A stretch of 64,000 nt of DNA from IMG/VR virus record IMGVR_UViG_3300035698_013060, positions 62,001-126,000 of that record, one strand, 5' to 3'. The translations under genes and the position numbers were made by a program. This document shows positions 4,980 to 59,689 of this stretch, piece by piece. How positions within the stretch are numbered: the stretch's first letter is position 1; every line of letters starts with the position of its first letter. The notes below the pieces were generated by a model. The model did not search any database. It worked only from the letters and a program-made list of their open reading frames with translations, and had not been told where the DNA came from.

Positions 4980-5673
4980 CCTTTGTTTTATGATAGAGAA
5001 ATACTGAATGAATCCCCCTTCTCCGAAGTCGGATATCAGGGATTTACCCTCGATCTTCAAGGACAAGTCAGGTAACATCGCTATCGTCGAAGATAAGAAG
5101 GGTTACAAACCCCAGGAAGCTCTTAAGCTTTGGAAGAAGATTTCCACTGTGAAGGGGATGAAGTCTTACCTCAAGGGAGCTAGCGCGAGGAGAGTCTACT
5201 TCAAAAATGAGTGGGATGAGCTCTTGAATCCTGATACTTCACCACATAAAGATGAGCTCTTGGATTCAGTAAAAAGGCTTAAGCTACACTTCATCGAAGA
5301 TATAGGTAGCGATGAACTGTACTTCTCCATGGTAGACGGGAAGATCTATGAGCTATGGTCTGGTGAATACACTCTCTCTGTATGGGAAGAGAACTGGGGT
5401 CGATACGTACATGCAAAGACCGGAGGACTTTTTGGTGAAGCTCCTCCAGAAAAGGAAGAAGGAAACTTCTGGAAGAACGTAAGGAACATTGGCAGATTTG
5501 TTGGCATGGTTCCTTTCGTGTTCACCGGAATACCGTATATTCTTTGGGACAAGTATCGGTGGGAGAAGGAAATGGAAAGAAAGCACGGTAAGGGAGCTTC
5601 TAAGAATATGAAGTATACGATCCCTGACTGGGCAATGAATTTTATGACAGTTGAAGAAGATTGCCAAGAATAG
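4977..5673 (+). CDS. Hypothetical membrane-associated protein (MPLFYDREILNES...), apparently frameshifted at the C5 run 5014-5018
   Basis: ATG 4977 has the repeat-borne RBS and the FYD motif, but this frame stops after 32 codons; the long ORF 5008-5673 is in the +1 frame; hydrophobic segment FVGMVPFVFTGIPYILW. Confidence 0.6.
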
Positions 5674-5744
5674 AGACTCTTAAGAATAGGAGTCTGTCTG
5701 AAGTAAAGAGGAAGCCGTCACAAACCGAAAAAGGAAAACGGACA

Positions 5745-6119
5745 ATGACACAGAACCTCTATGACGCGAACTACATAGACAAGATCGAACTCATCAAGGT
5801 CGCACAAAAGTACGACCTCGACGCGAACGCAGTGGCAGAAGCAGACACTCTTGATGCTCTCCTGAAGCAGCAGGAATTGATCCACAAAGCCGCCCGAAAG
5901 AAAGATCCCAACTTCTGCAACTCTGACGCCCTGTTGAAACTGCTGCGTCAGCTGGATGCTGTGAGAGCTGCTGATCTCGAAGTCGCTCTTACTGAATGCG
6001 AGAGCAAAAGAGATTTCAAGCGGTGGAAGCACGATGCTCATGATGAGCTCGAGAAGGCCCAGATCAGGAACAGAGAACTCTATGGGAATGCTGATGGGGA
6101 GACTGATGTCCCACGTTAG
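5745..6119 (+). CDS. Hypothetical helical protein
   Basis: AAGGA RBS before ATG 5745. Confidence 0.7.
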   Translation: MTQNLYDANYIDKIELIKVAQKYDLDANAVAEADTLDALLKQQELIHKAARKKDPNFCNSDALLKLLRQLDAVRAADLEVALTECESKRDFKRWKHDAHDELEKAQIRNRELYGNADGETDVPR

Positions 6120-6151
6120 AGGTGAATGAATTTCTACACGGAGAACCGATA

Positions 6152-14060: not shown

Positions 14061-15310
14061 GGCGACGTTACCCCCAGTATACTCTCCTCAATCGCCTTAA
14101 GGACGATGAGAGCACATGGAATGAGCATAAAGCTCCTAAGGTCCAGCATGATCTCAATGTCAGGTACCATGTCGAGAAGAGCGTTATGGTCGATGACTTC
14201 AGACTCAGTGTCGAGTCTGTCAGCCAAGTAGGTAATGATAAAGTTCTCCAATTCTCTTCCTGTTCCCGGGAACAGAGTGAGAGATTGAGCCTGTGCCAGG
14301 AAACCAGGATCACCCACGGCTATCTGAAACGCATCGGTCGGAACAGTCACACATGGATGCATGGCTTCGTAGTAATCACCTGGAAAAGCGAAGAAGATCG
14401 ACGTTACTTCACTGGACCTATAAGCTACGAGAGCTTCCGACGTGATGCTCATCAACGTCTCGGGGTGCCTGATCGCGTAATAGAATGTTTGCTTTTCTAC
14501 AGCGAGCATAGACACGTACGCCTCTCTCCGTGGAGAGAGTAAGACTGATGTATTATCGTAGAAACTAGTCTGAAACTCCAGAGCTTGCGTGATTTCCATC
14601 GAATGATGGGCCATATAGTTGACGATCTTCCCAGGGAGCGAACCATCGTAGTGTAGAAACGATGAGGTAGATCTATCATAGAAGTAGGTCCCGTACAAGT
14701 CAGACATCTGTTCCCTGAAGCTCCGGCATCTCCTGAGAGATTGGGCTAGGGTACTCTTTAGAATTGGAGTTCTGTTGTTCTCGTAGTCTGTGACACTAAA
14801 TTCAAGCTCATCATCCTTCTGCTCTTCCACCTGCGCTAAAGTCTCCGAAGAGAGCCTTATAGTCAGCTGATTGAAGCGCTTGGAATTCATGATGGACTTG
14901 GAGACTGATGTCACCTGGAACATGGCAACCACGATGGTCCCAGCATCATCGTATTCGATGGCAATGAAATCATCAGGGAACGGCGTTATCGTTCCAGGAA
15001 GAATCAAAGCCGGTGAGGATACTTCAGCCTCTGGGCCGAACGTTCCTGCACTGAGATCCAACGTCAGTTGTTCCAGTCCGTAGATCGGGAAACTGTCGAT
15101 CCTATTAAAGCGAACAGGGCTTTCGTCGCCTGCTACCTGGTATACAACGTCAAGGTGAGCATCCTGACTAGAAGCTGATACCTTCTTATTGTAGTACGCT
15201 AGGTAGCTTGGGGCTGACGACAGCATGTCGCTGTAGTCTTCCAAAGCGTTTGTCAGATTCTCTTGGATCTGATGCTGAATGATCCCTTGATCGTCAAGTA
15301 TTCTGGCCAT
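14057..15310 (-). CDS. Probable virion structural protein
   Basis: 417 aa; PVRFNRIDSFPIYG and ILPGTITPFPDDF motifs recalled from AR9/phiKZ-like structural proteins. Confidence 0.6.
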   Translation of the reverse strand: MARILDDQGIIQHQIQENLTNALEDYSDMLSSAPSYLAYYNKKVSASSQDAHLDVVYQVAGDESPVRFNRIDSFPIYGLEQLTLDLSAGTFGPEAEVSSPALILPGTITPFPDDFIAIEYDDAGTIVVAMFQVTSVSKSIMNSKRFNQLTIRLSSETLAQVEEQKDDELEFSVTDYENNRTPILKSTLAQSLRRCRSFREQMSDLYGTYFYDRSTSSFLHYDGSLPGKIVNYMAHHSMEITQALEFQTSFYDNTSVLLSPRREAYVSMLAVEKQTFYYAIRHPETLMSITSEALVAYRSSEVTSIFFAFPGDYYEAMHPCVTVPTDAFQIAVGDPGFLAQAQSLTLFPGTGRELENFIITYLADRLDTESEVIDHNALLDMVPDIEIMLDLRSFMLIPCALIVLKAIEESILGVTSP

Positions 15311-15581
15311 CTTGCCCTCCGCTCCGTCTCTTGAGCTGACGGATTTGCTTTGCTATTGGGCCCTTGTCGCTGGTGTCCGGGACGAAACTAACCCTGTCTT
15401 TGGGATAGACTACCCGGAAGCCCTCCATGTCGATATTGGTATAATGTATGAACAGGTCAGGGGCACCATTGTCTTGTTTGATATAACCTATACCGTGGTT
15501 GAACCACTTAACAATGCCCGTCAGCCTGTCAGGTCCGTCTTCTGCCGTCTCTAGCGCCGGTGCGCTTGGCTCTGTATCCAT
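15294..15581 (-). CDS. csp: Cold-shock domain protein
   Basis: TGIVKWFN-GIGYI, DLFIHY, KGPIA. Confidence 0.9.
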   Translation of the reverse strand: MDTEPSAPALETAEDGPDRLTGIVKWFNHGIGYIKQDNGAPDLFIHYTNIDMEGFRVVYPKDRVSFVPDTSDKGPIAKQIRQLKRRSGGQDGQNT

Positions 15582-16527: not shown

Positions 16528-16707
16528 ATCCTCTCCCTCTCAATCTCTCCTTCAACATGATAGGTGTAGAGTAACCTAAGCTCAATGAAAATCATGGAGC
16601 TTACGAATGTAATATGTATCAAAGAAAGAGGTATTTACGGGAAGAAAAGTAAAACTCCCTTACCCGGAAGATCCAGGTAAGGGGTTTCTATCTTTACATG
16701 TACGATG

Positions 16708-16890
16708 CTACATAGTCATATCGCACAAGGGACATCCTTCAAAGTTTGCACAATCAGAGCAAAGTAATGCCCCACACTCTCTACACAACTTCTTGTTGTT
16801 GGACATCACATCAGCCCCACATCCCTCACACTCTCCTATGAATATGAGCCGTTTCTTCTTTATGATTATCTTCTTTCTCTCTTCGTCCAT
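16708..16890 (-). CDS. Small Cys-rich zinc-finger protein
   Basis: Four CxxC pairs; GGAGG RBS before MDEERKK. Confidence 0.7.
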   Translation of the reverse strand: MDEERKKIIIKKKRLIFIGECEGCGADVMSNNKKLCRECGALLCSDCANFEGCPLCDMTM

Positions 16891-16891
16891 C

Positions 16892-21377: not shown

Positions 21378-22385
21378 TTAGACAGTGGTGCCAGTGGCAT
21401 CTACCCAGTTGGTTCCATCGAACCAAATCGGCTGACCGAGAGTGGTATCGAAGTAGTATTCGTAGTCAGCAGGACTTCCAGGTCTTGAACCTGTGACGCC
21501 GCCTTGGATCAACTGCTTACCATCAATGGCAGTCTGAAGGCCGGTGACATTGGCGATGGTATGAACGTGAGAAGTCGCAGCCTTACCATCAATGGCAGTC
21601 TGAAGGCCGGTGACATTGGCGATGGTATGAACATGGCTTGTAGCCGCTTTACCATCGATCGCTGTCTGAAGACCGGTGACATCTGCGATAGCATGTGCAT
21701 CTGCAGCTTGATGAGCGCTGATAGCACTGGCTGGAGCATCACCTTGAGCGACACTACCTGCACCTGTACCGACGTCTCTTACAGCTGAATCACCGAGACC
21801 TGTGATAGCTGCAGCTGCGTGAATATGACCAGTCGCGGCCTTGCCATCAAGAGCTGTCTGAAGACCGGTGACATCTGCGATAGCATGGGCGTCAGCAGCT
21901 TGATGAGCGCTAATAGCACTCGCTGCCGTGCCAGTCGGATCATAGACTCCTGAATGATCATGAACGATCGGAGCCTTACCATCGATTTGTGCTTGAAGTC
22001 CGGTAACATCCGAAACGATATGAGCGTGAACAGTCTGAGCCTTCCCGTCCAGCGACGTCTGAAGACCTGTCACATCAGAGATGATATGTGCATGGATCAA
22101 CGGAGATTTGGCGTCCAGAAGTCCTTGCAACCCTGATACGCCACCGACGGTGTGTCCATGTCCGGTATCGGTTTTCCCGTCGAGAATTCCTTGCAAACCG
22201 TCGACATTCCCCACGGTATGCGTGTGAACTGTCGGGGCCTTCTCATCAAGGGCGACTTGCAAAGACGATACGTCGTTGATGACATGTCCGTGAGCACCGA
22301 GTCCGGCCTGTTGCTTGTCGTTAACCCTCAGATTTAAGAGGGCCAGATGACTGATTGGTACTACTTGTTCTGTTGGAGAGGCCAT
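21378..22385 (-). CDS. Tail-fibre-like protein with HxH-x-I-x-DVTGLQ-x2-LDGK repeats
   Basis: About 22-aa His-rich phage tail repeats; C-terminal GSRP...YFDTTLGQPIWF module; late motif AACAGATTATTA at 22428-22439. Confidence 0.8.
   Translation of the reverse strand: MASPTEQVVPISHLALLNLRVNDKQQAGLGAHGHVINDVSSLQVALDEKAPTVHTHTVGNVDGLQGILDGKTDTGHGHTVGGVSGLQGLLDAKSPLIHAHIISDVTGLQTSLDGKAQTVHAHIVSDVTGLQAQIDGKAPIVHDHSGVYDPTGTAASAISAHQAADAHAIADVTGLQTALDGKAATGHIHAAAAITGLGDSAVRDVGTGAGSVAQGDAPASAISAHQAADAHAIADVTGLQTAIDGKAATSHVHTIANVTGLQTAIDGKAATSHVHTIANVTGLQTAIDGKQLIQGGVTGSRPGSPADYEYYFDTTLGQPIWFDGTNWVDATGTTV
21517..21632. repeat. Internal direct repeat (50-bp exact block, 66-bp period)
   Basis: ttaccatcaatggcagtctgaaggccggtgacattggcgatggtatgaac at 21517 and 21583. 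Confidence 0.9.
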
Positions 22386-49962: not shown

Positions 49963-50676
49963 CTAGAAGGGGATATTGTCACTGTGCTCGGGACTAATAT
50001 CTGTTTCATCACCCATTGGGAGGAGACCACTTATCTCGGAGACGAATTCCTCTAAGGTCCTAGAGGGGTTGTATCGTATATCCAATTTGAGGATCTTATT
50101 GATCTCCATTATGTCTTCTTTCCGACGAAGGAGAGCGCATTCAAGCTTCTTTAGCGTATCTCTGTTCATATCCCTGTGGTATTGCTTCACAAACTCCCGG
50201 ACGTTCCCATGAACGGCCGAGATCGGGATGAGAACCTTACCAGAATGAACGAGGTCATGGACAGTCTTGGAGAGCGGTACGACTCCTACCATATCTTTAT
50301 AGTGGAGTCTTATTACTTCATTCGCTATAGTGAATGAGCTAAAGGGTTTTTCGTTTTTCCTGATGAATTGATTAGCGACTGCATCAGTTATCTCATACAA
50401 TGTCAAGGGACTATGATGAATCTCAATCCTGACATCCTGAGATGTAACTTTAGATAAGAAAATATCCTCATCCAGGTCGACTTCATCTCTCAGGTAGGTA
50501 ACATAATCCTTGTATTCCAAACACCGACGAATGATGGACTCCACAGCTTTGACAAAGCGGTCCCACCGTTTCTTGTCTATAGCGTACGAAGGATAAAATT
50601 CAACTAAGCCGTAGCTGTCGCCATCGACCCCGTCAACTTCTCTTTCTATCTCTCTATCGTTTTTGCTCTTGGGCAT
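49963..50676 (-). CDS. HNH/His-Me-finger-like protein, paralog B
   Basis: IEIHHSPLTL...VGVVPLSKTVHDLVHSGK; paralogous to 52147-52866. Confidence 0.7.
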   Translation of the reverse strand: MPKSKNDREIEREVDGVDGDSYGLVEFYPSYAIDKKRWDRFVKAVESIIRRCLEYKDYVTYLRDEVDLDEDIFLSKVTSQDVRIEIHHSPLTLYEITDAVANQFIRKNEKPFSSFTIANEVIRLHYKDMVGVVPLSKTVHDLVHSGKVLIPISAVHGNVREFVKQYHRDMNRDTLKKLECALLRRKEDIMEINKILKLDIRYNPSRTLEEFVSEISGLLPMGDETDISPEHSDNIPF

Positions 50677-50699
50677 AGTTCTCTCCGGAATTGTGATTA

Positions 50700-51318
50700 T
50701 GAAGAAGAAATGAAAGTCCTGTGAAGGACTATCATTCTCGCGTTGTTCTGTACTACATCGATACACGTACAGAACGGTGGCTACGCAGCTGGAGGCCTAT
50801 TGAGGGCTTAATGACTGCGCGGTTTCCTAGCCATGGCGTGGTGAAGGTTTTATGGTCTCTCACCAAACCTGATAGGACTCCCCTTCCGCCAAATCAGAAC
50901 GGTATCTGTAGGGAGACTCAACTGGGTCCATTCGGGCCCGGAGGAGCATGGCTTTTTGACGGGCCACATCGCGATGATAGATATATTCACCCGTCGCGCG
51001 TTCGAGTGCCCTTCTATCCTCAGGGAGGACTTTGCGAAGCAGGTCCCATGACCTTTTTCCTTGTAGAGGTGGATTCGTATCCACTTGCTGCTTCGACGGC
51101 CTGTCAGGTGGCAATCGGCGGATGCACTTTCCCTCCGCAGGAGCTCCTCTTACCTCGGAGCATGGTTGGGAAGGGGTTGAACTGGAGGCTGTGGACTAGT
51201 CTCACCGATGATTCCAAGCATCTTCGAGGAGGGGTTGAGGTCAGTGTCCAACCGACCTATCCTCCTGAATCGAATAGGGACCAAGGAGTCTCATAGCGAG
51301 ACTCAGATTCTCCAGTTC
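50700..51318 (-). ncRNA. Large (about 610 nt) highly structured non-coding RNA, unclassified
   Basis: CATATTAC motif at 51325-51332, nested long-range stems, more than 10 hairpins, terminator-like 3' end at 50700-50738. Confidence 0.7.
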
Positions 51319-51324
51319 GTCTTA

Positions 51325-51332
51325 GTAATATG
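51325..51332 (-). promoter_or_regulatory. Putative early promoter core CATATTAC
   Basis: Recurrent motif directly before the RNA's first stem. Confidence 0.6.
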
Positions 51333-51413
51333 ATATAGAAAAGGCATTAGTTACGTCTGGTATCTCAAGACTCCATAGTAAGCCATACACGCATGCTCAC
51401 TCCATTTCAAATA

Positions 51414-51860
51414 CTACTTCTCGCGGGCAACGCCCTTCATCTTCTCGAAGGTACGCAGACCACCCATACCAAGCATCGCTAGGACCAGCTGCATGAGTTG
51501 TCCCACCTGGATCTTTGGTAGCTCAGCGAGGGCCAGATTCTCAGGCTTGAAGAATACTACCATCCACTCAGCCATAGGTGCTCCGAGGAAAGACCAGAAG
51601 ATTCCCATGCCACAAACCCAACCGATAAATGGTCTCCAACCTGCAACGAAGATCGACTTGTGAGCGGCTTCAACCTTGTTGACATCGAGCTGGGCTTTAC
51701 TGATGTCCATCAAGGCCATACCGAAATCGTTCTCGAAGTCAGCTTGCTTCTCCTCAAGGAGTTGCTGAGCTTTCTCTCGTGCGTGTTTATCCGGGATAAG
51801 TCTGTCGAGTGTACTCTCCAGGATTCTCATTGCTGGTGCTGCTAAAACACTCCAGATCAT
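51414..51860 (-). CDS. Holin, 3TM (GTA-type) family
   Basis: FVAGWRPFIGWVCG...MLGMGGLRTFEKMKGV. Confidence 0.85.
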   Translation of the reverse strand: MIWSVLAAPAMRILESTLDRLIPDKHAREKAQQLLEEKQADFENDFGMALMDISKAQLDVNKVEAAHKSIFVAGWRPFIGWVCGMGIFWSFLGAPMAEWMVVFFKPENLALAELPKIQVGQLMQLVLAMLGMGGLRTFEKMKGVAREK

Positions 51861-51899
51861 GATCGTTCTCCTCGGTTTTTGTTTCTATCTCGGATCGTA

Positions 51900-52115
51900 G
51901 AAAAAGTTGGGGCTAGGAGGACGTTAGTCCCCTTCGCCCCATGTGCGCCTCCGACACTCGCAGAAGCCCGGTGGAAGCCAATCCGGGCTTCCTTCTGGTC
52001 ATCACTTGTCAGACATGTCCACTTTCGTGGTATGGTCCTCCTTGTGTTGCCCGGTCGAGTGTTACAACCCCTAGCATGGGGCCGTGTTTGCCAACCGGAA
52101 TCATGAAAATCAATT
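51900..52115 (-). ncRNA. Structured leader / small RNA (about 210 nt) with mutually exclusive P1 and terminator, upstream of the holin
   Basis: gccccatg/catggggc, acactcg/cgagtgt, ccac-GAAA-gtgg, gaagcccgg/ccgggcttc, terminator plus U-tract; CATATTAT motif at 52125-52132. Confidence 0.65.
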
Positions 52116-52146
52116 ATGTACCTTATAATATGGGCACGAACAGCGT

Positions 52147-52866
52147 TTATCCGCGTCCGGTGTCCTTACTCTCCCTAGAAATGGCTTCCGTTAGAGCTGC
52201 TATCACATCGTCCAACGTCAATGGCTCTCCGTCTACTCTAACCTCAGGGGTTGAAAACTCAAGAGTTCCTTCAGGAACCAATTCTCCTCGTTTAGAAAGC
52301 TCTATTGCTAATAGAATCTTGGAGAGGGTCTCTTCATCGATTCCTCCAACGTACGCCCTAAGAAAACCCCCTACGTTTCCGTAGATCTGAGACATACTGA
52401 CAGTTACTTTCCCAGAATGTACTAGATCGTGGATGGTTTCTGACAGTGGTAGAATTCCAACTAGTCCCATAAAGTGAGCAGCCAGGACTTCATGAGCTAC
52501 TGTCATTGTCGTTATGGTATCCCCTTGGGACAGCATATGGTCAGCAACGATCTCGATAATATCGTGAAGTGTCAAAGGACAATGATGGATTTCGATATCT
52601 ACTTTATCTTCTCCTATGATGTTTCCTAGAAAGGAACAGTTGTTTAGGTCTAGATCAATCTTACAACCGGAAATAAAGAGCTTGTATTCGATGCTAGATC
52701 GAATCATGCCTTTGACACTGTTCACAAATCTAAGCCAGTCTTTTCCGCTCAGTTCCTTGCTGAAGAAGGATTGGACGTAGAATCCACCCTCAGAGTGAAG
52801 CTCTGGACCATCTGCTGTCTCAACTGACGTTATGTTATGTAAACCATCGTGATCACTACTGTCCAT
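52147..52866 (-). CDS. HNH/His-Me-finger-like protein, paralog A
   Basis: IEIHHCPLTL...VGILPLSETIHDLVHSGK; AGGAGG RBS. Confidence 0.75.
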   Translation of the reverse strand: MDSSDHDGLHNITSVETADGPELHSEGGFYVQSFFSKELSGKDWLRFVNSVKGMIRSSIEYKLFISGCKIDLDLNNCSFLGNIIGEDKVDIEIHHCPLTLHDIIEIVADHMLSQGDTITTMTVAHEVLAAHFMGLVGILPLSETIHDLVHSGKVTVSMSQIYGNVGGFLRAYVGGIDEETLSKILLAIELSKRGELVPEGTLEFSTPEVRVDGEPLTLDDVIAALTEAISRESKDTGRG

Positions 52867-52984: not shown

Positions 52985-53605
52985 CTAGAGAGTATTGATG
53001 AATGTACCACGGGCGTACGCTGTCTGCTGACGCTGAAGATTGATAGACTCCTGTTCTCTAGCAGCGAAGTTGTCTTCAAAGACCGCAATCAACTTATCGA
53101 GCTCAGCTCTCACCACAGGATTTTTGGCCTTCGTTCTGAGCCGCTGAAGTTCCGGAATGAGTGTCCTACCCTTGACGATCAGACTCGTAGTGATGTTGTC
53201 GGCTTTATCATTGAGGATTCCAGCCTGAACAGCGTAAATCAGACCGACGATCACTCCAACGATGAAGATGACGAAACCTACTGAGGCTCCAGTTCCTGCT
53301 GTCAAAAGAAGTCCAATGAGCCCGATTCCTGTTCCCAGAAGGGAGATGAGAGTTTTTTCACCAGCTTCATCTTTCAAGCGACGACGCTTGGAGATAAGTC
53401 TGCTAACTTCTGCTGACCATTCACCGATACTCTTTGTGATGGAGTCCTCTTTGCCTTCTGTCAGGAAACTCTCGTCTCCTCTGAGTCCAGCCTTGGCCAT
53501 CTCGAAAGCTTCTTCTCCGAGCAGAGAGACCAAGTCTTCTCGGCTCTCTTCCAGTACTAAGAGCAACGATTCATCCAAACCATCTTGATCTTGGTAAAAA
53601 AGCAT
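52985..53605 (-). CDS. Membrane protein with MLFYQD...LDE N-terminus (putative ejected head protein)
   Basis: Acidic leader with several xxE sites, then a Gly-rich hydrophobic hairpin. Confidence 0.75.
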   Translation of the reverse strand: MLFYQDQDGLDESLLLVLEESREDLVSLLGEEAFEMAKAGLRGDESFLTEGKEDSITKSIGEWSAEVSRLISKRRRLKDEAGEKTLISLLGTGIGLIGLLLTAGTGASVGFVIFIVGVIVGLIYAVQAGILNDKADNITTSLIVKGRTLIPELQRLRTKAKNPVVRAELDKLIAVFEDNFAAREQESINLQRQQTAYARGTFINTL

Positions 53606-53722: not shown

Positions 53723-56581
53723 ATGATACAGAACTTTCCAGACCTCCCGAAAAGTTCGGCTGATGAGATATCAGCGCTCCTGGAGTTTTGTCGGAGCCTG
53801 GTATTTAAAGACTCGGCTAAAGCCGAGACGGCCGAGACTTTGTTGTCCTCTAAGGCAGCATATAATCTCATTAGTGCTGAGTTAGGATTTACCCCGTTCG
53901 ATGAGTCTAGTGACCCCACTGGAGAAATGGCGCAGAATGAGATCGATGATTACGTAGAGACTAACGAGTACTACGTTACCTACTTGGAAAACCTTGGTCT
54001 AAGAGAGTCTGGTACTCTAGAAACATCAGACCAGTATAAGATGGTGGTAGCTGTAGTTAAGGCTAGAACTGCTGACGACCATGAGATAATCTTCTATCCC
54101 GAGAGCTTCGACCGGAAGCTCCGGGGTTTGTTTCTCGATTTCTTCAACACTAGTCTACACTATTACAATTCTGTTCTTCATAATGAGGGACTGGGTAAGT
54201 ACGAGCGGTACTGGAATTACGTCAACTTTGTCGTCAGTATCATGACTCTCGAGCGAATGATCACGGCCCGCATGGACTTAGCGTTTGATATCGACGCATT
54301 CGACGAACGGTCCATACGAAACATGTTTGCATCCTATGGTCTAGATTTCTTCGAGATCGTCCCGGACAAGTACCGGCGGCGCATCTTAAAGAACATCAAC
54401 TATCTTCTGGAACACAAGGGTACGACACAGGCACTTGTCAATGTCATGCAGATTTTCGGGTTTGACGACATCAAGCTTTTCAAGTACTACTTGGTCAAGG
54501 ATTTTGCCCGAGAGGGTGATGGTTCGATCAGTATGCCTCCAAACTCGTACCTCCAATTTGCTCAGGTAGAACATGATGAGGAGAACCTTGAAGCTGCTTT
54601 CTTGAGTTCGACGACTAAATGGGAAACGTTTGATTCAGTGACCGGCTCTGATCCTTACTGGCATGCTACTGAGGAAGAGATTGCAGTCCATGACTTCACA
54701 TACCTCAATACCAAGTACCTCGGAATCGACGTCAGTATTGATATGTTGAAGAGTACTCTGAACCACTCTTATTTCTACAACTACTTGTACCAGTTCAAGA
54801 AGGCTGGCGACTTGGCCATTCCTGGGAACTACAAGATGACGGTCCAGAGTTCCAAGATCAGTGGAGAACCTATTCACATCTTGGATATGATGATAGCACT
54901 CCACGCCCTTACCATGGAGATCATGGGGTGGGAAGATGTAATCGTCAAGGACTACTACCAAGTGGCGTACACATTTGCAAACGCCCATAGGAACAAGCCT
55001 ACCTTTCAAGAAGATGATCAAGCAGCTTGGGACGTTGATCTCCCAGCTTCTTCTGAAGGAGAAAAAGCTGCAGCCTTTATGGGCAATATCGAGAATCTCC
55101 TCGGGGTCGATTGGGATGATGTTGACATAGCTACCCTCAGAGATGACGTTAGGACATATCTCGAGTCCCTACCGGACAGAGGAGATCTGACTCCAGGAGA
55201 AAATTCCAACTACGACTCAGCTGACCTGGATGGTAAAGAGACGACTCCATACGACTTCGTCAGGACATACCAGGACAACCTGAAGTATGCCGCCAAGCTC
55301 AGGCAGTTGATGATAGACGAGACTAATAAGTCTCGCTATGAAGTCCTGAAGGACATCTACAACTACAAGTTCATTGCTCAATTCAATACTGAGCTCTTCA
55401 GTGGCTACGATACCTATGCTGAGTACTTGGCAGCTGAGAGCCCAGGACTCTATGCATTCATCAGTGGTAAGGATTCGAACGACGCCTTGTATGACATCAT
55501 CACCTTGATCGACAACTTCATTGACGACGCTGACGTCATCGTGGAAACATTTGCTGGAGACACTGGACTGATCGACGGAGAGATGAGTGTTACCAACAAC
55601 ATGGAGTTGTTTAACCTGACTCGGACTTTCATCAAGATGATGGTGGATACTTTCAAGGCATATACCACTCAGTTGAGAGAGTTCTCTGTCTACTACGTTC
55701 ACAGGGATCCATTTGATGATAGGATTCATCTTTTTGATGAGCTCACCCTCGGTCTCCATGGAGGCTTCTACGGGACAGATACTGCAAGGATCTCGGACGA
55801 TGGTATCGGTACAGCAGGAGGACAAGTACATCCGAGGTTCTTGGTATCGGTAGAGTATTCTGATGAGATAGGGATGTACGATAACTACCTTGTGGAACAA
55901 GGTATCAGCGAACCTCCTATTGACTACATGATCCTGGATGATAACGACGACGATCTAGAGGTTTCAGTCAGGACCAGTTACGCTCTTCCGCTTGATATGA
56001 GTGATGAGAGCGATTTCGTCATTCAGTTAGGAGACCTAAGACTAGATCCTTCCACAGGTCAACCTGTTATAGGTTCAACGTGGTATGGATCCATCAGAGC
56101 CTTAGACTCCATGGCCCTTATTTCCATTTTGAAGGTCAAGGACTACACTATCAGAGACGAGCTTCTTGACTGGGCTGAATTCGGTAATATGCCAGGAGAG
56201 GGAGATGCCGTCGGTCTAGGAGATTCATTGTATCCTTCCATCAGGCTCGTCGTCGCTCCCGGAAATCACATAGACGAACAACCCATTAGCGTCGTAGACG
56301 ATGAGCCGGGGTTTGAGCCTTTCCTTCTCAGTAGGCTATCCCCTGGAGACGGCTTCAAGTGGATGGACGGAGACCCACAGACGGACACGCTCGATCTGAC
56401 TTTCTGGGACTCTGTCCTTACGATGATCGAACAGACACCTGGACATGCGTGGTCCGGAGACCCAAATGACTACTTGACCAATCTTTCATTTCACGAGGCC
56501 AGTGACTTTCATTCCAGGTTAGTCAGGACTACTGAGGTGGCCAGGACGAGAGATGCAATAGAAATGACAGTTGTGTCGTAA
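53723..56581 (+). CDS. Large virion structural protein (baseplate-wedge-like)
   Basis: RRILKNINYLLEHKGT...IFGF...KYYLVK motif; late promoter motif. Confidence 0.65.
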   Translation: MIQNFPDLPKSSADEISALLEFCRSLVFKDSAKAETAETLLSSKAAYNLISAELGFTPFDESSDPTGEMAQNEIDDYVETNEYYVTYLENLGLRESGTLETSDQYKMVVAVVKARTADDHEIIFYPESFDRKLRGLFLDFFNTSLHYYNSVLHNEGLGKYERYWNYVNFVVSIMTLERMITARMDLAFDIDAFDERSIRNMFASYGLDFFEIVPDKYRRRILKNINYLLEHKGTTQALVNVMQIFGFDDIKLFKYYLVKDFAREGDGSISMPPNSYLQFAQVEHDEENLEAAFLSSTTKWETFDSVTGSDPYWHATEEEIAVHDFTYLNTKYLGIDVSIDMLKSTLNHSYFYNYLYQFKKAGDLAIPGNYKMTVQSSKISGEPIHILDMMIALHALTMEIMGWEDVIVKDYYQVAYTFANAHRNKPTFQEDDQAAWDVDLPASSEGEKAAAFMGNIENLLGVDWDDVDIATLRDDVRTYLESLPDRGDLTPGENSNYDSADLDGKETTPYDFVRTYQDNLKYAAKLRQLMIDETNKSRYEVLKDIYNYKFIAQFNTELFSGYDTYAEYLAAESPGLYAFISGKDSNDALYDIITLIDNFIDDADVIVETFAGDTGLIDGEMSVTNNMELFNLTRTFIKMMVDTFKAYTTQLREFSVYYVHRDPFDDRIHLFDELTLGLHGGFYGTDTARISDDGIGTAGGQVHPRFLVSVEYSDEIGMYDNYLVEQGISEPPIDYMILDDNDDDLEVSVRTSYALPLDMSDESDFVIQLGDLRLDPSTGQPVIGSTWYGSIRALDSMALISILKVKDYTIRDELLDWAEFGNMPGEGDAVGLGDSLYPSIRLVVAPGNHIDEQPISVVDDEPGFEPFLLSRLSPGDGFKWMDGDPQTDTLDLTFWDSVLTMIEQTPGHAWSGDPNDYLTNLSFHEASDFHSRLVRTTEVARTRDAIEMTVVS

Positions 56582-59119: not shown

Positions 59120-59185
59120 CATCTACCGTGAATAATGAAAACGAACTTTCATATTACGGTTGTAACAATCGTGCAATCCCCCTTT

Positions 59186-59689
59186 TTAATTCTCCTCTTT
59201 GACCTTGGCTCTGTTAGCTCTAGCGATCTGTTTGAACCTAGCCTGTCTGTCCATGTCAGCGAACTTGACATCGTTCAATCCAAGGACCTTGACCATGACG
59301 GCAGTATATACTACGTTGGAGGCGAACACAATTATTCCCTCTCTTCCACGGAAATACCTGGAGAGAGTTGCGATGTATATATTCGACATCTCTTCCATAA
59401 GTTCTTGAACGATCTCAATGGACATCTTCTCGATAACGTCATCCCTGAGGAATCCTGTTTTCTTCTGGTCCAACTTGCTCTTTGCCGTATATTGGACCTT
59501 CGTACTAATCTTGACGTCTATCAAGAACATCAGGGTTTCCATGTCTTTACTGAAGTCCAACTTGGGAGGAGGTATCCTAACCTTTGGTACACCCTTACGT
59601 TGAAGGAAGGTCTGAAGAAGTAGAATTCCAGTGATAACGCACCCCCAGAATTCGATCGAACCTGAAAACTGTCTAAGAATCTCAGTCAT
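59186..59689 (-). CDS. Membrane-anchored hypothetical protein
   Basis: N-terminal TM helix; GGAG RBS; AACATCGAATTT upstream. Confidence 0.7.
   Translation of the reverse strand: MTEILRQFSGSIEFWGCVITGILLLQTFLQRKGVPKVRIPPPKLDFSKDMETLMFLIDVKISTKVQYTAKSKLDQKKTGFLRDDVIEKMSIEIVQELMEEMSNIYIATLSRYFRGREGIIVFASNVVYTAVMVKVLGLNDVKFADMDRQARFKQIARANRAKVKEEN

What the first reader, a model, noticed from the sequence alone, without database searches (positions are those of the whole stretch)
50700..51332. About 610-nt ornate non-coding RNA with its own promoter motif and terminator
Seen: a gene-sized gap in an otherwise packed minus-strand region, with the CATATTAC motif at 51325-51332. Domain 1 is closed by a perfect 9-bp stem (51318-51310 GAACTGGAG with 51187-51179) and contains gagtctc/gagactc and aggag..aggtc/gacct..ctcct hairpins. 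Domain 2 is closed by CCCCTTCC/GGAAGGGG (51176-51169 with 50887-50880), about 290 nt apart. It contains gctcc/ggagc, gcgga/tccgc, gtggat/atccac, ggac/gtcc, ccct/aggg and gacggg/cccgtc stems. Then come aggttt/aaacct, tggcta/tagcca with nested cgcag/ctgcg, gttctgtac/gtacagaac, and a terminator-like hairpin with a U-rich tail at 50700-50738. Known: phages carry large ncRNAs such as GOLLD and ROOL; I cannot match this one to them, or to tmRNA, RNase P, SRP or an intron. Inference: a new large phage ncRNA class transcribed early.
Basis: partly seen in the sequence, partly recalled or inferred. Interest (0 to 1): 0.88.

Follow-up and report, generated by a model that had tools for sequence, protein, structure and literature searches.

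The report
Orphan non-coding gap beside phage holin
A 737-base stretch of an uncultivated jumbo phage has no normal gene signal and looks like a phage-specific untranslated transcript with its own promoter and a weak terminator, but it exists only in this one phage, so the claim of a new class of large structured RNA cannot be tested and is not supported as stated.

Summary
The gap (50677-51413) is real. It is the largest stretch of the window without codon-typical coding signal. However, perfect stems are no more frequent than in shuffles. Only the 5' 140 nt (z -3.6) and the 3' 180 nt (z -5.2) fold better than chance. The 297-nt 'domain 2' does not (z -1.2). No Rfam family matches.

CATATTAC is a credible virion-RNAP early-promoter core: 5 of 6 CATATTAY sites are intergenic, and it has AR9-like 6N-G spacing. 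A weak terminator closes the unit.

The sequence is a singleton. It occurs in three identical assemblies of one phage. DNA, protein, pattern and covariance-model searches found no homolog. The closest relative carries a 438-aa beta-helix gene in this slot. Covariation is therefore untestable and 'class' is unsupported.

The + strand ORF is longer than chance allows (P 0.001-0.005) and has an RBS. Yet its codon usage is unlike every real gene tested, and it has no homolog.

Best reading (about 0.5): a lineage-specific untranslated minus-strand transcription unit. Main rival (about 0.3): an orphan + strand protein.

The parts
50677..51413 (.). Gap without codon-typical coding signal, between the holin and the phrog_12252a gene. 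The insert is specific to this phage.
   Evidence: ORF list and own codon-model gene calls. Six-frame codon LLR is negative throughout. 3-base periodicity is weak: chi2 11.9 against 19-48 per equal length in genes. The relative L005 has a 438-aa gene here.
51325..51342 (-). Early-promoter-like element: a T-rich run (51342-51337) followed by CATATTAC (51332-51325).
   Evidence: 4 sites against 0.85 expected; 5 of 6 CATATTAY sites are intergenic, P 7e-5. The site at 16616-16609 has the same T-rich upstream context. It resembles the AR9 early consensus AAATATATATTAT-(6N)-G (PMC5312081) and the phiKZ early motif with a T-rich upstream part (PMC8244752).
51318..51318 (-). Inferred transcription start: a G located 6 nt after the motif.
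   Evidence: Sequence read directly, using the AR9 rule consensus-(6N)-G+1. This is an inference; no start site has been mapped.
51179..51318 (-). 5' domain: a long irregular hairpin closed by a perfect 9-bp helix.
   Evidence: z -3.63 on minus and -2.68 on plus. Closing helix pair probability 0.996, low entropy 0.41. A covariance model of it finds only itself in 603 kb of related loci.
50880..51176 (-). Central region ('domain 2'). An 8-bp closing helix is predicted, but the interior is ill-defined.
   Evidence: z -1.23 on minus (36 of 300 shuffles fold as well) and -2.53 on plus. Closing helix pair probability 0.87, entropy 1.03.
50739..50879 (-). 3' hairpin cluster, including the perfect 9-bp hairpin 50775-50745.
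   Evidence: Together with the terminator, z -5.2 on minus and -3.5 on plus, in the top 1% of 180-nt windows. Hairpin pair probability 0.99 and dG -12.4.
50736..50747 (-). AACA-(6N)-GA, similar to the AR9 late-promoter consensus AACA-(6N)-TA/G.
   Evidence: AACA-(6N)-T[AG]-like strings lie upstream of many genes of the window. AR9 consensus from PMC5312081. The match is imperfect (G instead of T).
50700..50730 (-). Weak intrinsic-terminator-like hairpin (6 bp, 3 G-C) with a U-rich tail. It ends 24 nt before the phrog_12252a start codon.
   Evidence: dG -10.3; pair probability 0.96.
50721..51296 (+). Antisense ORF. The open run covers 50703-51293 (197 codons). Possible starts are GTG 50721, or ATG 50811 preceded by GAGG. 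This is the rival reading.
   Evidence: Length P 0.0013 and 0.005. RBS. Called as 161 aa or 82 aa by public pipelines; the protein cluster has only these two members. Codon LLR -0.008. No homolog. No Pfam or PHROG match.
51414..51860 (-). Upstream neighbour: a 3-TM holin.
   Evidence: Pfam PF11351 2.3e-19. PHROG holin 1.6e-30.
49963..50676 (-). Downstream neighbour: a phrog_12252 protein, paralog of 52147-52866.
   Evidence: PHROG 1.4e-51. Orthologs in AR9, PBS1, phiR1-37 and Staphylococcus jumbo phages.

Best explanation
The gap is a lineage-specific, untranslated transcription unit on the minus strand of an AR9/PBS1/phiR1-37-like jumbo phage that encodes its own multisubunit RNA polymerases.

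Proposed mechanism (inferred, not shown):
- A virion-RNAP-type early promoter (T-rich run plus CATATTAC, start at G51318) fires just downstream of the holin gene.
- It produces an RNA of about 615 nt.
- The first 140 nt form a long stable hairpin.
- The last 180 nt form a row of stable hairpins ending in a weak intrinsic terminator, 24 nt before the next gene.
- A late-promoter-like AACA motif sits among the 3' hairpins.

The unit most likely works as transcriptional punctuation. It makes an early untranslated RNA or long leader, and it separates the holin from the downstream late operon. In the closest relative these are one tightly packed operon. Whether the RNA has a trans-acting role is unknown. 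Nothing shows that the middle 300 nt is structured.
For: The phage belongs to the AR9/phiR1-37 group.

No coding signal:
- Codon LLR of the best frame is -0.008. All 70 called genes score 0.12 or more.
- None of 250 windows of 161 codons inside real genes scores 0 or less.
- None of 101 long ORFs with GC 0.2-0.56 from 80 other jumbo phages scores 0.02 or less.
- 3-base periodicity is weak.
- No Pfam or PHROG hit for any frame piece.

Promoter:
- 5 of 6 CATATTAY sites are intergenic, P 7e-5.
- Two sites share the T-rich upstream context.
- Four of the five intergenic sites have a same-strand gene next downstream (74-649 nt); the fifth first runs antisense across a convergent gene.
- G lies 6 nt downstream, as in the AR9 early consensus.

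Structure and polarity:
- z is more negative on the minus than the plus strand for the whole unit (-4.29 against -2.94).
- The same holds for the 5' domain (-3.63 against -2.68) and the 3' region (-5.2 against -3.5).
- The U-tail follows the terminator hairpin on the minus strand.
- There is no hairpin between the + ORF stop and the holin stop (z +0.4). The three convergent gene junctions of the window all carry very stable hairpins. This fits a co-directional arrangement, not a convergent one.

Precedent: AR9 has 5' UTRs up to 491 nt. It also has a late start at 207979 that heads a structured leader of about 490 nt (z -6.44) next to its phrog_12252 homolog.
Against: - No transcript data exist.
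- No homolog exists, so there is neither conservation nor covariation.
- The nearest relative lacks the unit and has a protein gene instead. A conserved function is therefore not indicated.
- The promoter matches only 7 of 13 positions of the AR9 consensus, and AR9's virion RNAP is reported to be intolerant of deviations.
- The terminator is weak (dG -10.3).
- The central 297 nt is thermodynamically unremarkable.
- The 197-codon open frame on the other strand is unexpected for non-coding DNA (P 0.0013 and 0.005), and its first ATG has an RBS.
Confidence: 0.5

Rival explanations
1. The + strand ORF (161 aa from ATG 50811, or 191 aa from GTG 50721) is a real orphan protein gene. It would be compositionally atypical, either recently acquired or very young. 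It lies antisense within a minus-strand block. The CATATTAC promoter would then drive the downstream minus genes, or an antisense RNA across this gene.
For: - The 197-codon open run has P 0.0013 against dinucleotide shuffles and 0.005 against a second-order Markov null, over all six frames.
- Stops on the + strand are distributed 5/10/16 by phase, and all 5 in-phase stops lie outside the ORF.
- GAGG lies 5 nt before ATG 50811. 61% of called genes have such a site, against 13% of all ATGs.
- Two public pipelines call it.
- A parallel exists: CATATTAC at 59150-59157 (+) points antisense into a real minus-strand gene (phrog_26727, 59186-59689). The distance from motif to gene end is 29 nt, the same as here.
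Against: - Codon LLR is about 0 in all four quarters. This is outside the range of every native gene window and of 101 foreign jumbo-phage genes of similar GC.
- Position-specific base composition lacks the purine-rich first position and low-GC second position of real genes.
- The product would be rich in P and G and poor in K, I and E.
- No homolog among 5.8 billion clusters or 1.84 billion representatives except itself.
- No phage tblastn hit.
- No recognisable promoter on the + strand upstream (read).
- No terminator between it and the convergent holin.
- AlphaFold is uninformative: pLDDT 31, but a codon-typical neighbour gene also gives 35.
Confidence: 0.3
2. The gap is inert leftover DNA: the decayed remains of a moron, a homing-endonuclease gene or another gene that once occupied this variable slot. 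The promoter-like and terminator-like strings would be relics or chance, and the predicted folds would have no function.
For: - The slot is variable. L005 has a beta-helix/NosD-like gene here, and phiR1-37 has g279 directly adjacent with no gap.
- The sequence is a singleton.
- Central GC (0.54-0.57) is above that of the flanks.
- Three of six frames are unusually open in the core, as in formerly coding DNA.
- Stem counts are at chance level.
Against: - No residual similarity to the L005 gene, to neighbours, or to any Pfam or PHROG family in any frame.
- The promoter motif is strongly tied to intergenic sites.
- The 5' and 3' parts are clearly more stable than shuffles.
- The 100% identity across three assemblies says nothing either way.
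Confidence: 0.12
3. One reading: the whole unit of about 610 nt is a new kind of large, intricately folded ('ornate') phage ncRNA with a tertiary-structure-dependent function, comparable to GOLLD or ROOL.
For: - Domain architecture is reproduced by the folding ensemble.
- Whole-unit z is -4.29.
- It has its own promoter-like and terminator-like signals.
- It has no Rfam match and no coding statistics.
Against: - The largest domain is not more stable than random and is poorly defined.
- The genome-wide background z is already -1.5, and 1 of 50 ordinary windows scores lower.
- There is no second member anywhere and it is absent from the closest relative, so nothing indicates selection on structure.
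- Known large ncRNAs were defined by conservation and covariation, which cannot be shown here.
Confidence: 0.08

Closest known systems
Long 5' untranslated leaders of phage AR9 transcripts (up to 491 nt). One example is the leader of about 490 nt that starts at 207979, next to g242 and upstream of g243 and tRNA-Asn (PMC5312081, main text and Table S3).
   Same: Same phage group. A long structured untranslated stretch lies next to a phrog_12252 gene; the AR9 gap has z -6.44. It is driven by a phage-RNAP promoter. The AR9 authors suggest such leaders may control translation of downstream genes.
   Different: There is no sequence or covariance-model similarity. The AR9 leader lies downstream of the phrog_12252 gene and has a late AACA promoter. 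Here the unit lies upstream, has an early-type motif, and ends in a terminator-like hairpin.
GOLLD (RF01998) and ROOL (RF03087), large ncRNAs found in phages and prophages.
   Same: Size class of several hundred nucleotides, phage-borne, non-coding, multi-hairpin prediction.
   Different: No match to either model, even at E up to 10. Those families are defined by many homologs with covariation, whereas this is a single sequence. The central domain is not thermodynamically supported.
Early promoters of the virion RNA polymerase of jumbo phages: AR9 AAATATATATTAT-(6N)-G, phiR1-37 ATATATTAT-type, and the phiKZ extended -10 with a T-rich upstream part.
   Same: ATATTA(C/T) core, T-rich upstream run, G 6 nt downstream, strong intergenic bias.
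   Different: Only 7 of 13 positions match the AR9 consensus. A C precedes ATATTA. No start site is mapped for this phage.
Phage morons: inserts flanked by their own promoter and terminator, absent from relatives.
   Same: Insert between two genes that are adjacent or differently separated in relatives. It has its own promoter-like and terminator-like signals.
   Different: Morons encode a protein on the transcribed strand. Here the transcribed (minus) strand has no usable ORF.
Antisense transcripts of AR9 (reported for g242 and others) and the window's own CATATTAC site at 59150.
   Same: A phage promoter pointing into the antisense of an ORF of 160-190 codons, 29 nt from its end.
   Different: At 59150 the opposite gene is demonstrably real (PHROG hit, typical codons). 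Here the opposite ORF has no coding statistics.

Membership tests
Known Rfam families (GOLLD, ROOL, group I and II introns, RNase P, tmRNA, SRP, HEARO, OLE, raiA and 4,200 others) | Match to the family covariance model at its gathering score | tested here: not met
   No match in the whole window at gathering thresholds. At E up to 10 on 50500-51500, the only hit is a 14-bit snoRNA chance match outside the unit. ARAGORN finds no tRNA or tmRNA.
Structured ncRNA family (generic, defined Rfam-style) | Homologs in at least two independent lineages | tested here: not met
   Only 100% identical copies of the same phage were found. Nothing was found in the phage records, in genome contigs, or in 79 related jumbo-phage loci by blastn, nhmmer or CM.
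Structured ncRNA family (generic, defined Rfam-style) | Compensatory base changes supporting the helices | not testable with these tools
   No diverged sequence is available.
Structured ncRNA family (generic, defined Rfam-style) | Fold stability beyond both shuffles and the genomic background | tested here: inconclusive
   Whole unit z -4.29 against a genome mean of -1.49, sd 1.28. The 5' part (-3.63) and the 3' part (-5.2) pass; the central 297 nt (-1.23) does not.
Jumbo-phage virion-RNAP early promoter (AR9 type) | Extended AT-rich consensus, with the start 6 nt downstream at G | tested here: inconclusive
   CATATTAC-(6N)-G51318 with a T-rich run upstream. 7 of 13 positions match the AR9 consensus.
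Jumbo-phage virion-RNAP early promoter (AR9 type) | Over-represented motif confined to intergenic regions and oriented toward genes | tested here: met
   5 of 6 CATATTAY sites lie in the 10.5% of the window that is intergenic, P 7e-5.
Jumbo-phage virion-RNAP early promoter (AR9 type) | Mapped primary 5' end early in infection | not testable with these tools
   Uncultivated phage; no transcript data.
Intrinsic terminator | G+C-rich stem-loop followed directly by a U run | tested here: met
   50730-50715: 6 bp, 3 G-C, followed by a U-rich tail. dG -10.3, pair probability 0.96. It is weak compared with the -22.4 hairpin at about 51938-51907.
Protein-coding gene (+ ORF 50721/50811-51296) | Open frame longer than chance, with a ribosome-binding site | tested here: met
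   P 0.0013 and 0.005. GAGG lies 5 nt before ATG 50811.
Protein-coding gene (+ ORF 50721/50811-51296) | Codon usage, position-specific composition and 3-base periodicity of real genes | tested here: not met
   LLR -0.008 against a minimum of 0.047 in 250 native windows and 0.049 in 101 foreign genes with GC 0.2-0.56. GC2 is 0.51 against 0.30-0.41 in real genes, and chi2 is 11.9. First-position purines are 0.52 against 0.66.
Protein-coding gene (+ ORF 50721/50811-51296) | Homologs or family membership | tested here: not met
   Searches found only itself.
Pseudogene of the syntenic gene or of a known family | Residual protein similarity in some frame | tested here: not met
   tblastn of the L005 438-aa protein against the window hits nothing in the gap. 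All frame pieces of 38 aa or more were searched against Pfam, PHROGs, phage records and local loci with no result.

The most novel reading that the evidence does not exclude
The unit of about 615 nt is a genuine early-expressed, trans-acting structured RNA of a jumbo phage that carries its own RNA polymerases. It would be the first member of a family not yet sampled elsewhere. A second, smaller unit of the same design (51895-52132) lies on the other side of the holin.
Probability: 0.1. Interest if true: 0.6.

Novelty: new member of a known kind. Interest (0 to 1): 0.3.

Why it matters
If the minus-strand transcript is real, it adds a case of a very long untranslated early RNA or leader in the AR9-like jumbo phages. 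Such leaders have been seen there but not explained. It would also show promoter-plus-terminator 'punctuation' inserted around a holin gene, which could time lysis. If the + ORF is real instead, it is a protein with no coding statistics, of interest for gene birth. As things stand it is a single unconserved sequence, so it cannot found an RNA class and is of modest general interest.

Tried and rejected
- **Known RNA families:** Rfam at gathering thresholds and at E up to 10; tRNA and tmRNA scans. None matched.
- **Pseudogene of the syntenic beta-helix gene, of neighbours or of any family:** no similarity.
- **Stop-codon recoding of a minus-strand gene downstream of the holin:** rejected. The in-frame stops are a mix of UAA, UGA and UAG, and every minus frame has 8 or more stops (reading; stop counts by frame).
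- **Intron:** rejected. Both flanking genes are complete and their orthologs are collinear.
- **Repeat, MITE, iterons or origin:** no significant direct, tandem or dispersed repeats.
- **Paralogous copies in the window or genome:** none.
- **Homolog hunting:**
  - Distant blastn against phage records.
  - Protein-anchored scans from both neighbour genes.
  - Six-pattern scans with the + ORF in viral, metagenome and genome collections, and with the minus 111-aa frame piece in viral and genome collections.
  - nhmmer, blastn and a covariance model of the 5' domain against 79 related jumbo-phage loci.
  - A hairpin pattern scan, which gave chance-level hits only.
- **Association of long ORF-free stretches with phrog_12252 genes:** seen in only 8 of 78 related loci.
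- **AlphaFold on the + ORF:** uninformative, because a bona fide neighbour gene scores equally low.
- **Amino-acid-composition-only score:** too weak to discriminate.
- **GC-regressed MFE ranking:** not used as evidence, because it is confounded by G/C strand asymmetry.

Full report
**Context**

The window is part of IMG/VR contig UViG_3300035698_013060 (241 kb). Its proteins include split multisubunit RNA polymerase subunits and phrog_12252 proteins. The annotated relatives of these proteins are in AR9, PBS1, phiR1-37 and Staphylococcus jumbo phages. Gene order around the finding matches phiR1-37 g279-g274. On the minus strand the order is:
- phrog_12252b (52866-52147)
- a 286-nt gap
- a 3-TM holin (51860-51414)
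- the 737-nt gap under study
- phrog_12252a (50676-49963)
- two small genes
- an RNAP beta' fragment (48993-47638)

The gap is real. It is the longest stretch without a codon-typical gene in the window.

The MFE and the centroid contain both closing helices. Their ensemble pair probabilities are 0.996 and 0.87. The 9-bp hairpin scores 0.99 and the terminator hairpin 0.96. The local gagtctc/gagactc hairpin is not formed at all.

A list of stems is not evidence by itself. Perfect inverted repeats of 7, 8 or 9 nt or more are as common in dinucleotide shuffles and in other windows of this genome.

Fold energies give a mixed picture:
- The whole unit has z -4.29 on the minus strand and -2.94 on the plus strand (150 shuffles). 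Ordinary 633-nt windows of this genome average -1.49 (sd 1.28), and one of 50 is lower.
- The signal sits in the 5' 140 nt (z -3.63) and the 3' 180 nt (z -5.2).
- The 297-nt 'domain 2', the ornate part, is at background (z -1.23), and its interior is poorly defined.
- A z of -5.2 lies in the top 1% of 180-nt windows. The other extreme windows are mostly intergenic terminator regions.

**Is it a known RNA?**

No. No Rfam family matches at gathering thresholds in the whole window. Nothing credible appears at E up to 10 in 50500-51500. There is no tRNA or tmRNA.

**Is it coding?**

Against coding:
- A codon log-likelihood model trained on the window's genes gives -0.008 per codon for the + ORF, flat across its four quarters.
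- All 70 called genes score 0.12 or more. None of 250 windows of 161 codons inside real genes scores below 0.047.
- The same model gives at least 0.049 to all 101 long ORFs with GC 0.2-0.56 from 80 other jumbo phages. The statistic therefore also works on foreign genes.
- Three-base periodicity is weak. There is no low-GC second codon position and no purine-rich first position.
- No frame piece hits Pfam, PHROGs or any phage record.
- The + ORF has no relative among 5.8 billion clusters or 1.84 billion representatives. Its cluster holds only the two start variants called in this same phage.

For coding:
- The 197-codon open run is much longer than chance: P 0.0013 with dinucleotide shuffles and 0.005 with a second-order Markov null, taken over six frames.
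- Its first ATG (50811) has GAGG at the usual distance. 61% of called genes have such a site, against 13% of all ATGs.

These two lines of evidence pull in opposite directions, and I could not reconcile them. AlphaFold does not help. The ORF gives pLDDT 31, but a codon-typical neighbour gene gives 35 in the same single-sequence mode.

**Relatives**

The same phage was assembled three times with 100% identity: IMG/VR, JGI Ga0222626_1002618 and ENA ERZ27315925. There is therefore no variation to read.

The closest other phage is ENA contig L005 (neighbour protein 66% identical, GC 66%). It keeps the order phrog_12252b - holin - X - phrog_12252a - ... - RNAP with spacers of 6 to 41 nt. X is a 438-aa beta-helix/NosD-like gene with no similarity to the gap. 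phiR1-37 also has no gap.

The following searches all returned only the source phage or chance hits:
- Pattern scans of IMG/VR, JGI metagenomes and GTDB genomes with the + ORF, and of IMG/VR and GTDB genomes with the minus frame piece.
- Distant blastn against phage records.
- blastn, nhmmer and a covariance model of the 5' domain against 79 related loci.
- A hairpin pattern scan.

Covariation therefore cannot be tested, and no class can be claimed.

**Transcription signals**

*Early-type promoter.* CATATTAY occurs six times in the window, and five of these sites lie in the 10.5% that is intergenic (P 7e-5).
- The sites at 51332 and 16616 share a T-rich run just upstream.
- The AR9 early consensus is AAATATATATTAT-(6N)-G+1. 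phiKZ early promoters have an extended -10 with a T-rich upstream part (PMC5312081, PMC8244752).
- Here CATATTAC is followed after 6 nt by G51318, the first base of the 9-bp helix.

This supports an early-type promoter by analogy only.

*Late-type motif.* The AR9 late motif AACA-(6N)-T[AG] recurs upstream of many genes of the window. An imperfect copy lies at 50747-50736, among the 3' hairpins.

*Terminator and polarity.*
- The terminator-like hairpin has its U-tail on the minus strand.
- Between the + ORF stop and the holin stop there is no structure (z +0.4).
- The three convergent junctions of the window carry some of its most stable hairpins.

The layout is therefore that of a co-directional minus-strand unit, not of a convergent gene pair.

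**Synthesis**

I weighed four points:
- the coding statistics, which argue strongly against a gene;
- the signal layout, which argues moderately for a minus-strand unit;
- the ORF length and RBS, which argue strongly for a gene;
- the roughly equal rarity of atypical genes and long non-coding gaps in this genome.

On that basis I put about 0.5 on an untranslated minus-strand transcription unit: an early RNA or long leader that also separates the holin from the downstream operon.

AR9 offers a precedent for long structured leaders. Its 5' UTRs reach 491 nt. A late start at 207979 heads a highly structured stretch of about 490 nt next to its phrog_12252 homolog. That stretch is not homologous to this one.

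A possible hybrid reading is an early antisense RNA across a + strand gene. The site at 59150 suggests it: there CATATTAC points into a real convergent gene with the same 29-nt spacing.

**Verdict**

This is a real, unusual gap with credible transcription punctuation and two stable terminal hairpin domains. It is a singleton, it is absent from the nearest relative, its 'ornate' core is unsupported, and a protein alternative remains unresolved. It is not a demonstrated new ncRNA class.

Noticed in passing
window 51861-52146 (minus strand): A second non-coding gap lies directly upstream of the holin and has the same design as the main gap. CATATTAT is at 52132-52125. About 230 nt of stable hairpins follow (z -4.4 to -4.5). 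Then comes a strong terminator-like hairpin (dG -22.4) with a U5 run at about 51938-51895, followed by AACA-(6N)-GA and the holin RBS. The relative L005 has only 6 nt here. There is no Rfam match. This could be a small early RNA or an attenuating leader for the holin.
   Followed up: partly
window 59150-59157 (+) and gene 59186-59689 (-): A CATATTAC site sits 29 nt beyond the stop of a convergent, codon-typical gene (phrog_26727, membrane-protein moron) and points antisense into it. The next same-strand gene is 621 nt downstream. The spacing and geometry match those of the motif and the + ORF in the finding.
   Followed up: partly
window, upstream regions of many genes (e.g. 52985-53605, 53723-56581, 15294-15581, 21378-22385): AACA-(6N)-T[AG] recurs 20-80 nt upstream of start codons. 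It matches the experimentally defined late-promoter consensus of AR9's non-virion RNAP. This suggests the phage shares AR9's late transcription logic, and perhaps its uracil-containing DNA.
   Followed up: partly
L005 4808-6124: The closest relative carries a 438-aa beta-helix/NosD-like protein (a possible depolymerase or fibre) between the holin and phrog_12252a. This is exactly where the window has the gap, so the slot is a replacement hot spot.
   Followed up: partly
L003 (AR9) 5592-6151: A 560-nt ORF-free stretch follows AR9 g242, the phrog_12252 homolog. It is very stably folded (z -6.44). According to AR9 Table S3, a late primary start lies at 207979, which would make it a leader of about 490 nt for g243 and tRNA-Asn. 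It is not similar in sequence to the window's gap.
   Followed up: partly
window 49963-50676 and 52147-52866; alignment A1: Two phrog_12252 paralogs flank the holin. Across eight homologs the invariant residues include E85, H87, H88, P90, H125, H140 and H144, which looks like a metal-binding or nuclease-like signature. The family has no assigned function.
   Followed up: no
window 51414-51860: The holin is of the gene-transfer-agent 3-TM type. Its nearest phage relatives are small phages of Roseobacter, Vibrio, Methylophilales and Paracoccus (36-47% identity). This hints at an aquatic proteobacterial host.
   Followed up: partly
window 16528-16891: A 364-nt intergenic gap contains the best twin of the promoter-like element (T-rich run plus CATATTAC at 16616-16609), 82 nt upstream of gene 16527-16114.
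   Followed up: no
L066 3616-4230 (IMGVR_UViG_3300047567_000058): A related jumbo phage of similar GC (0.47) has a 614-nt stretch without any ORF of 60 aa or more, directly downstream of its phrog_12252 gene. It has no sequence similarity to the window's gap.
   Followed up: no
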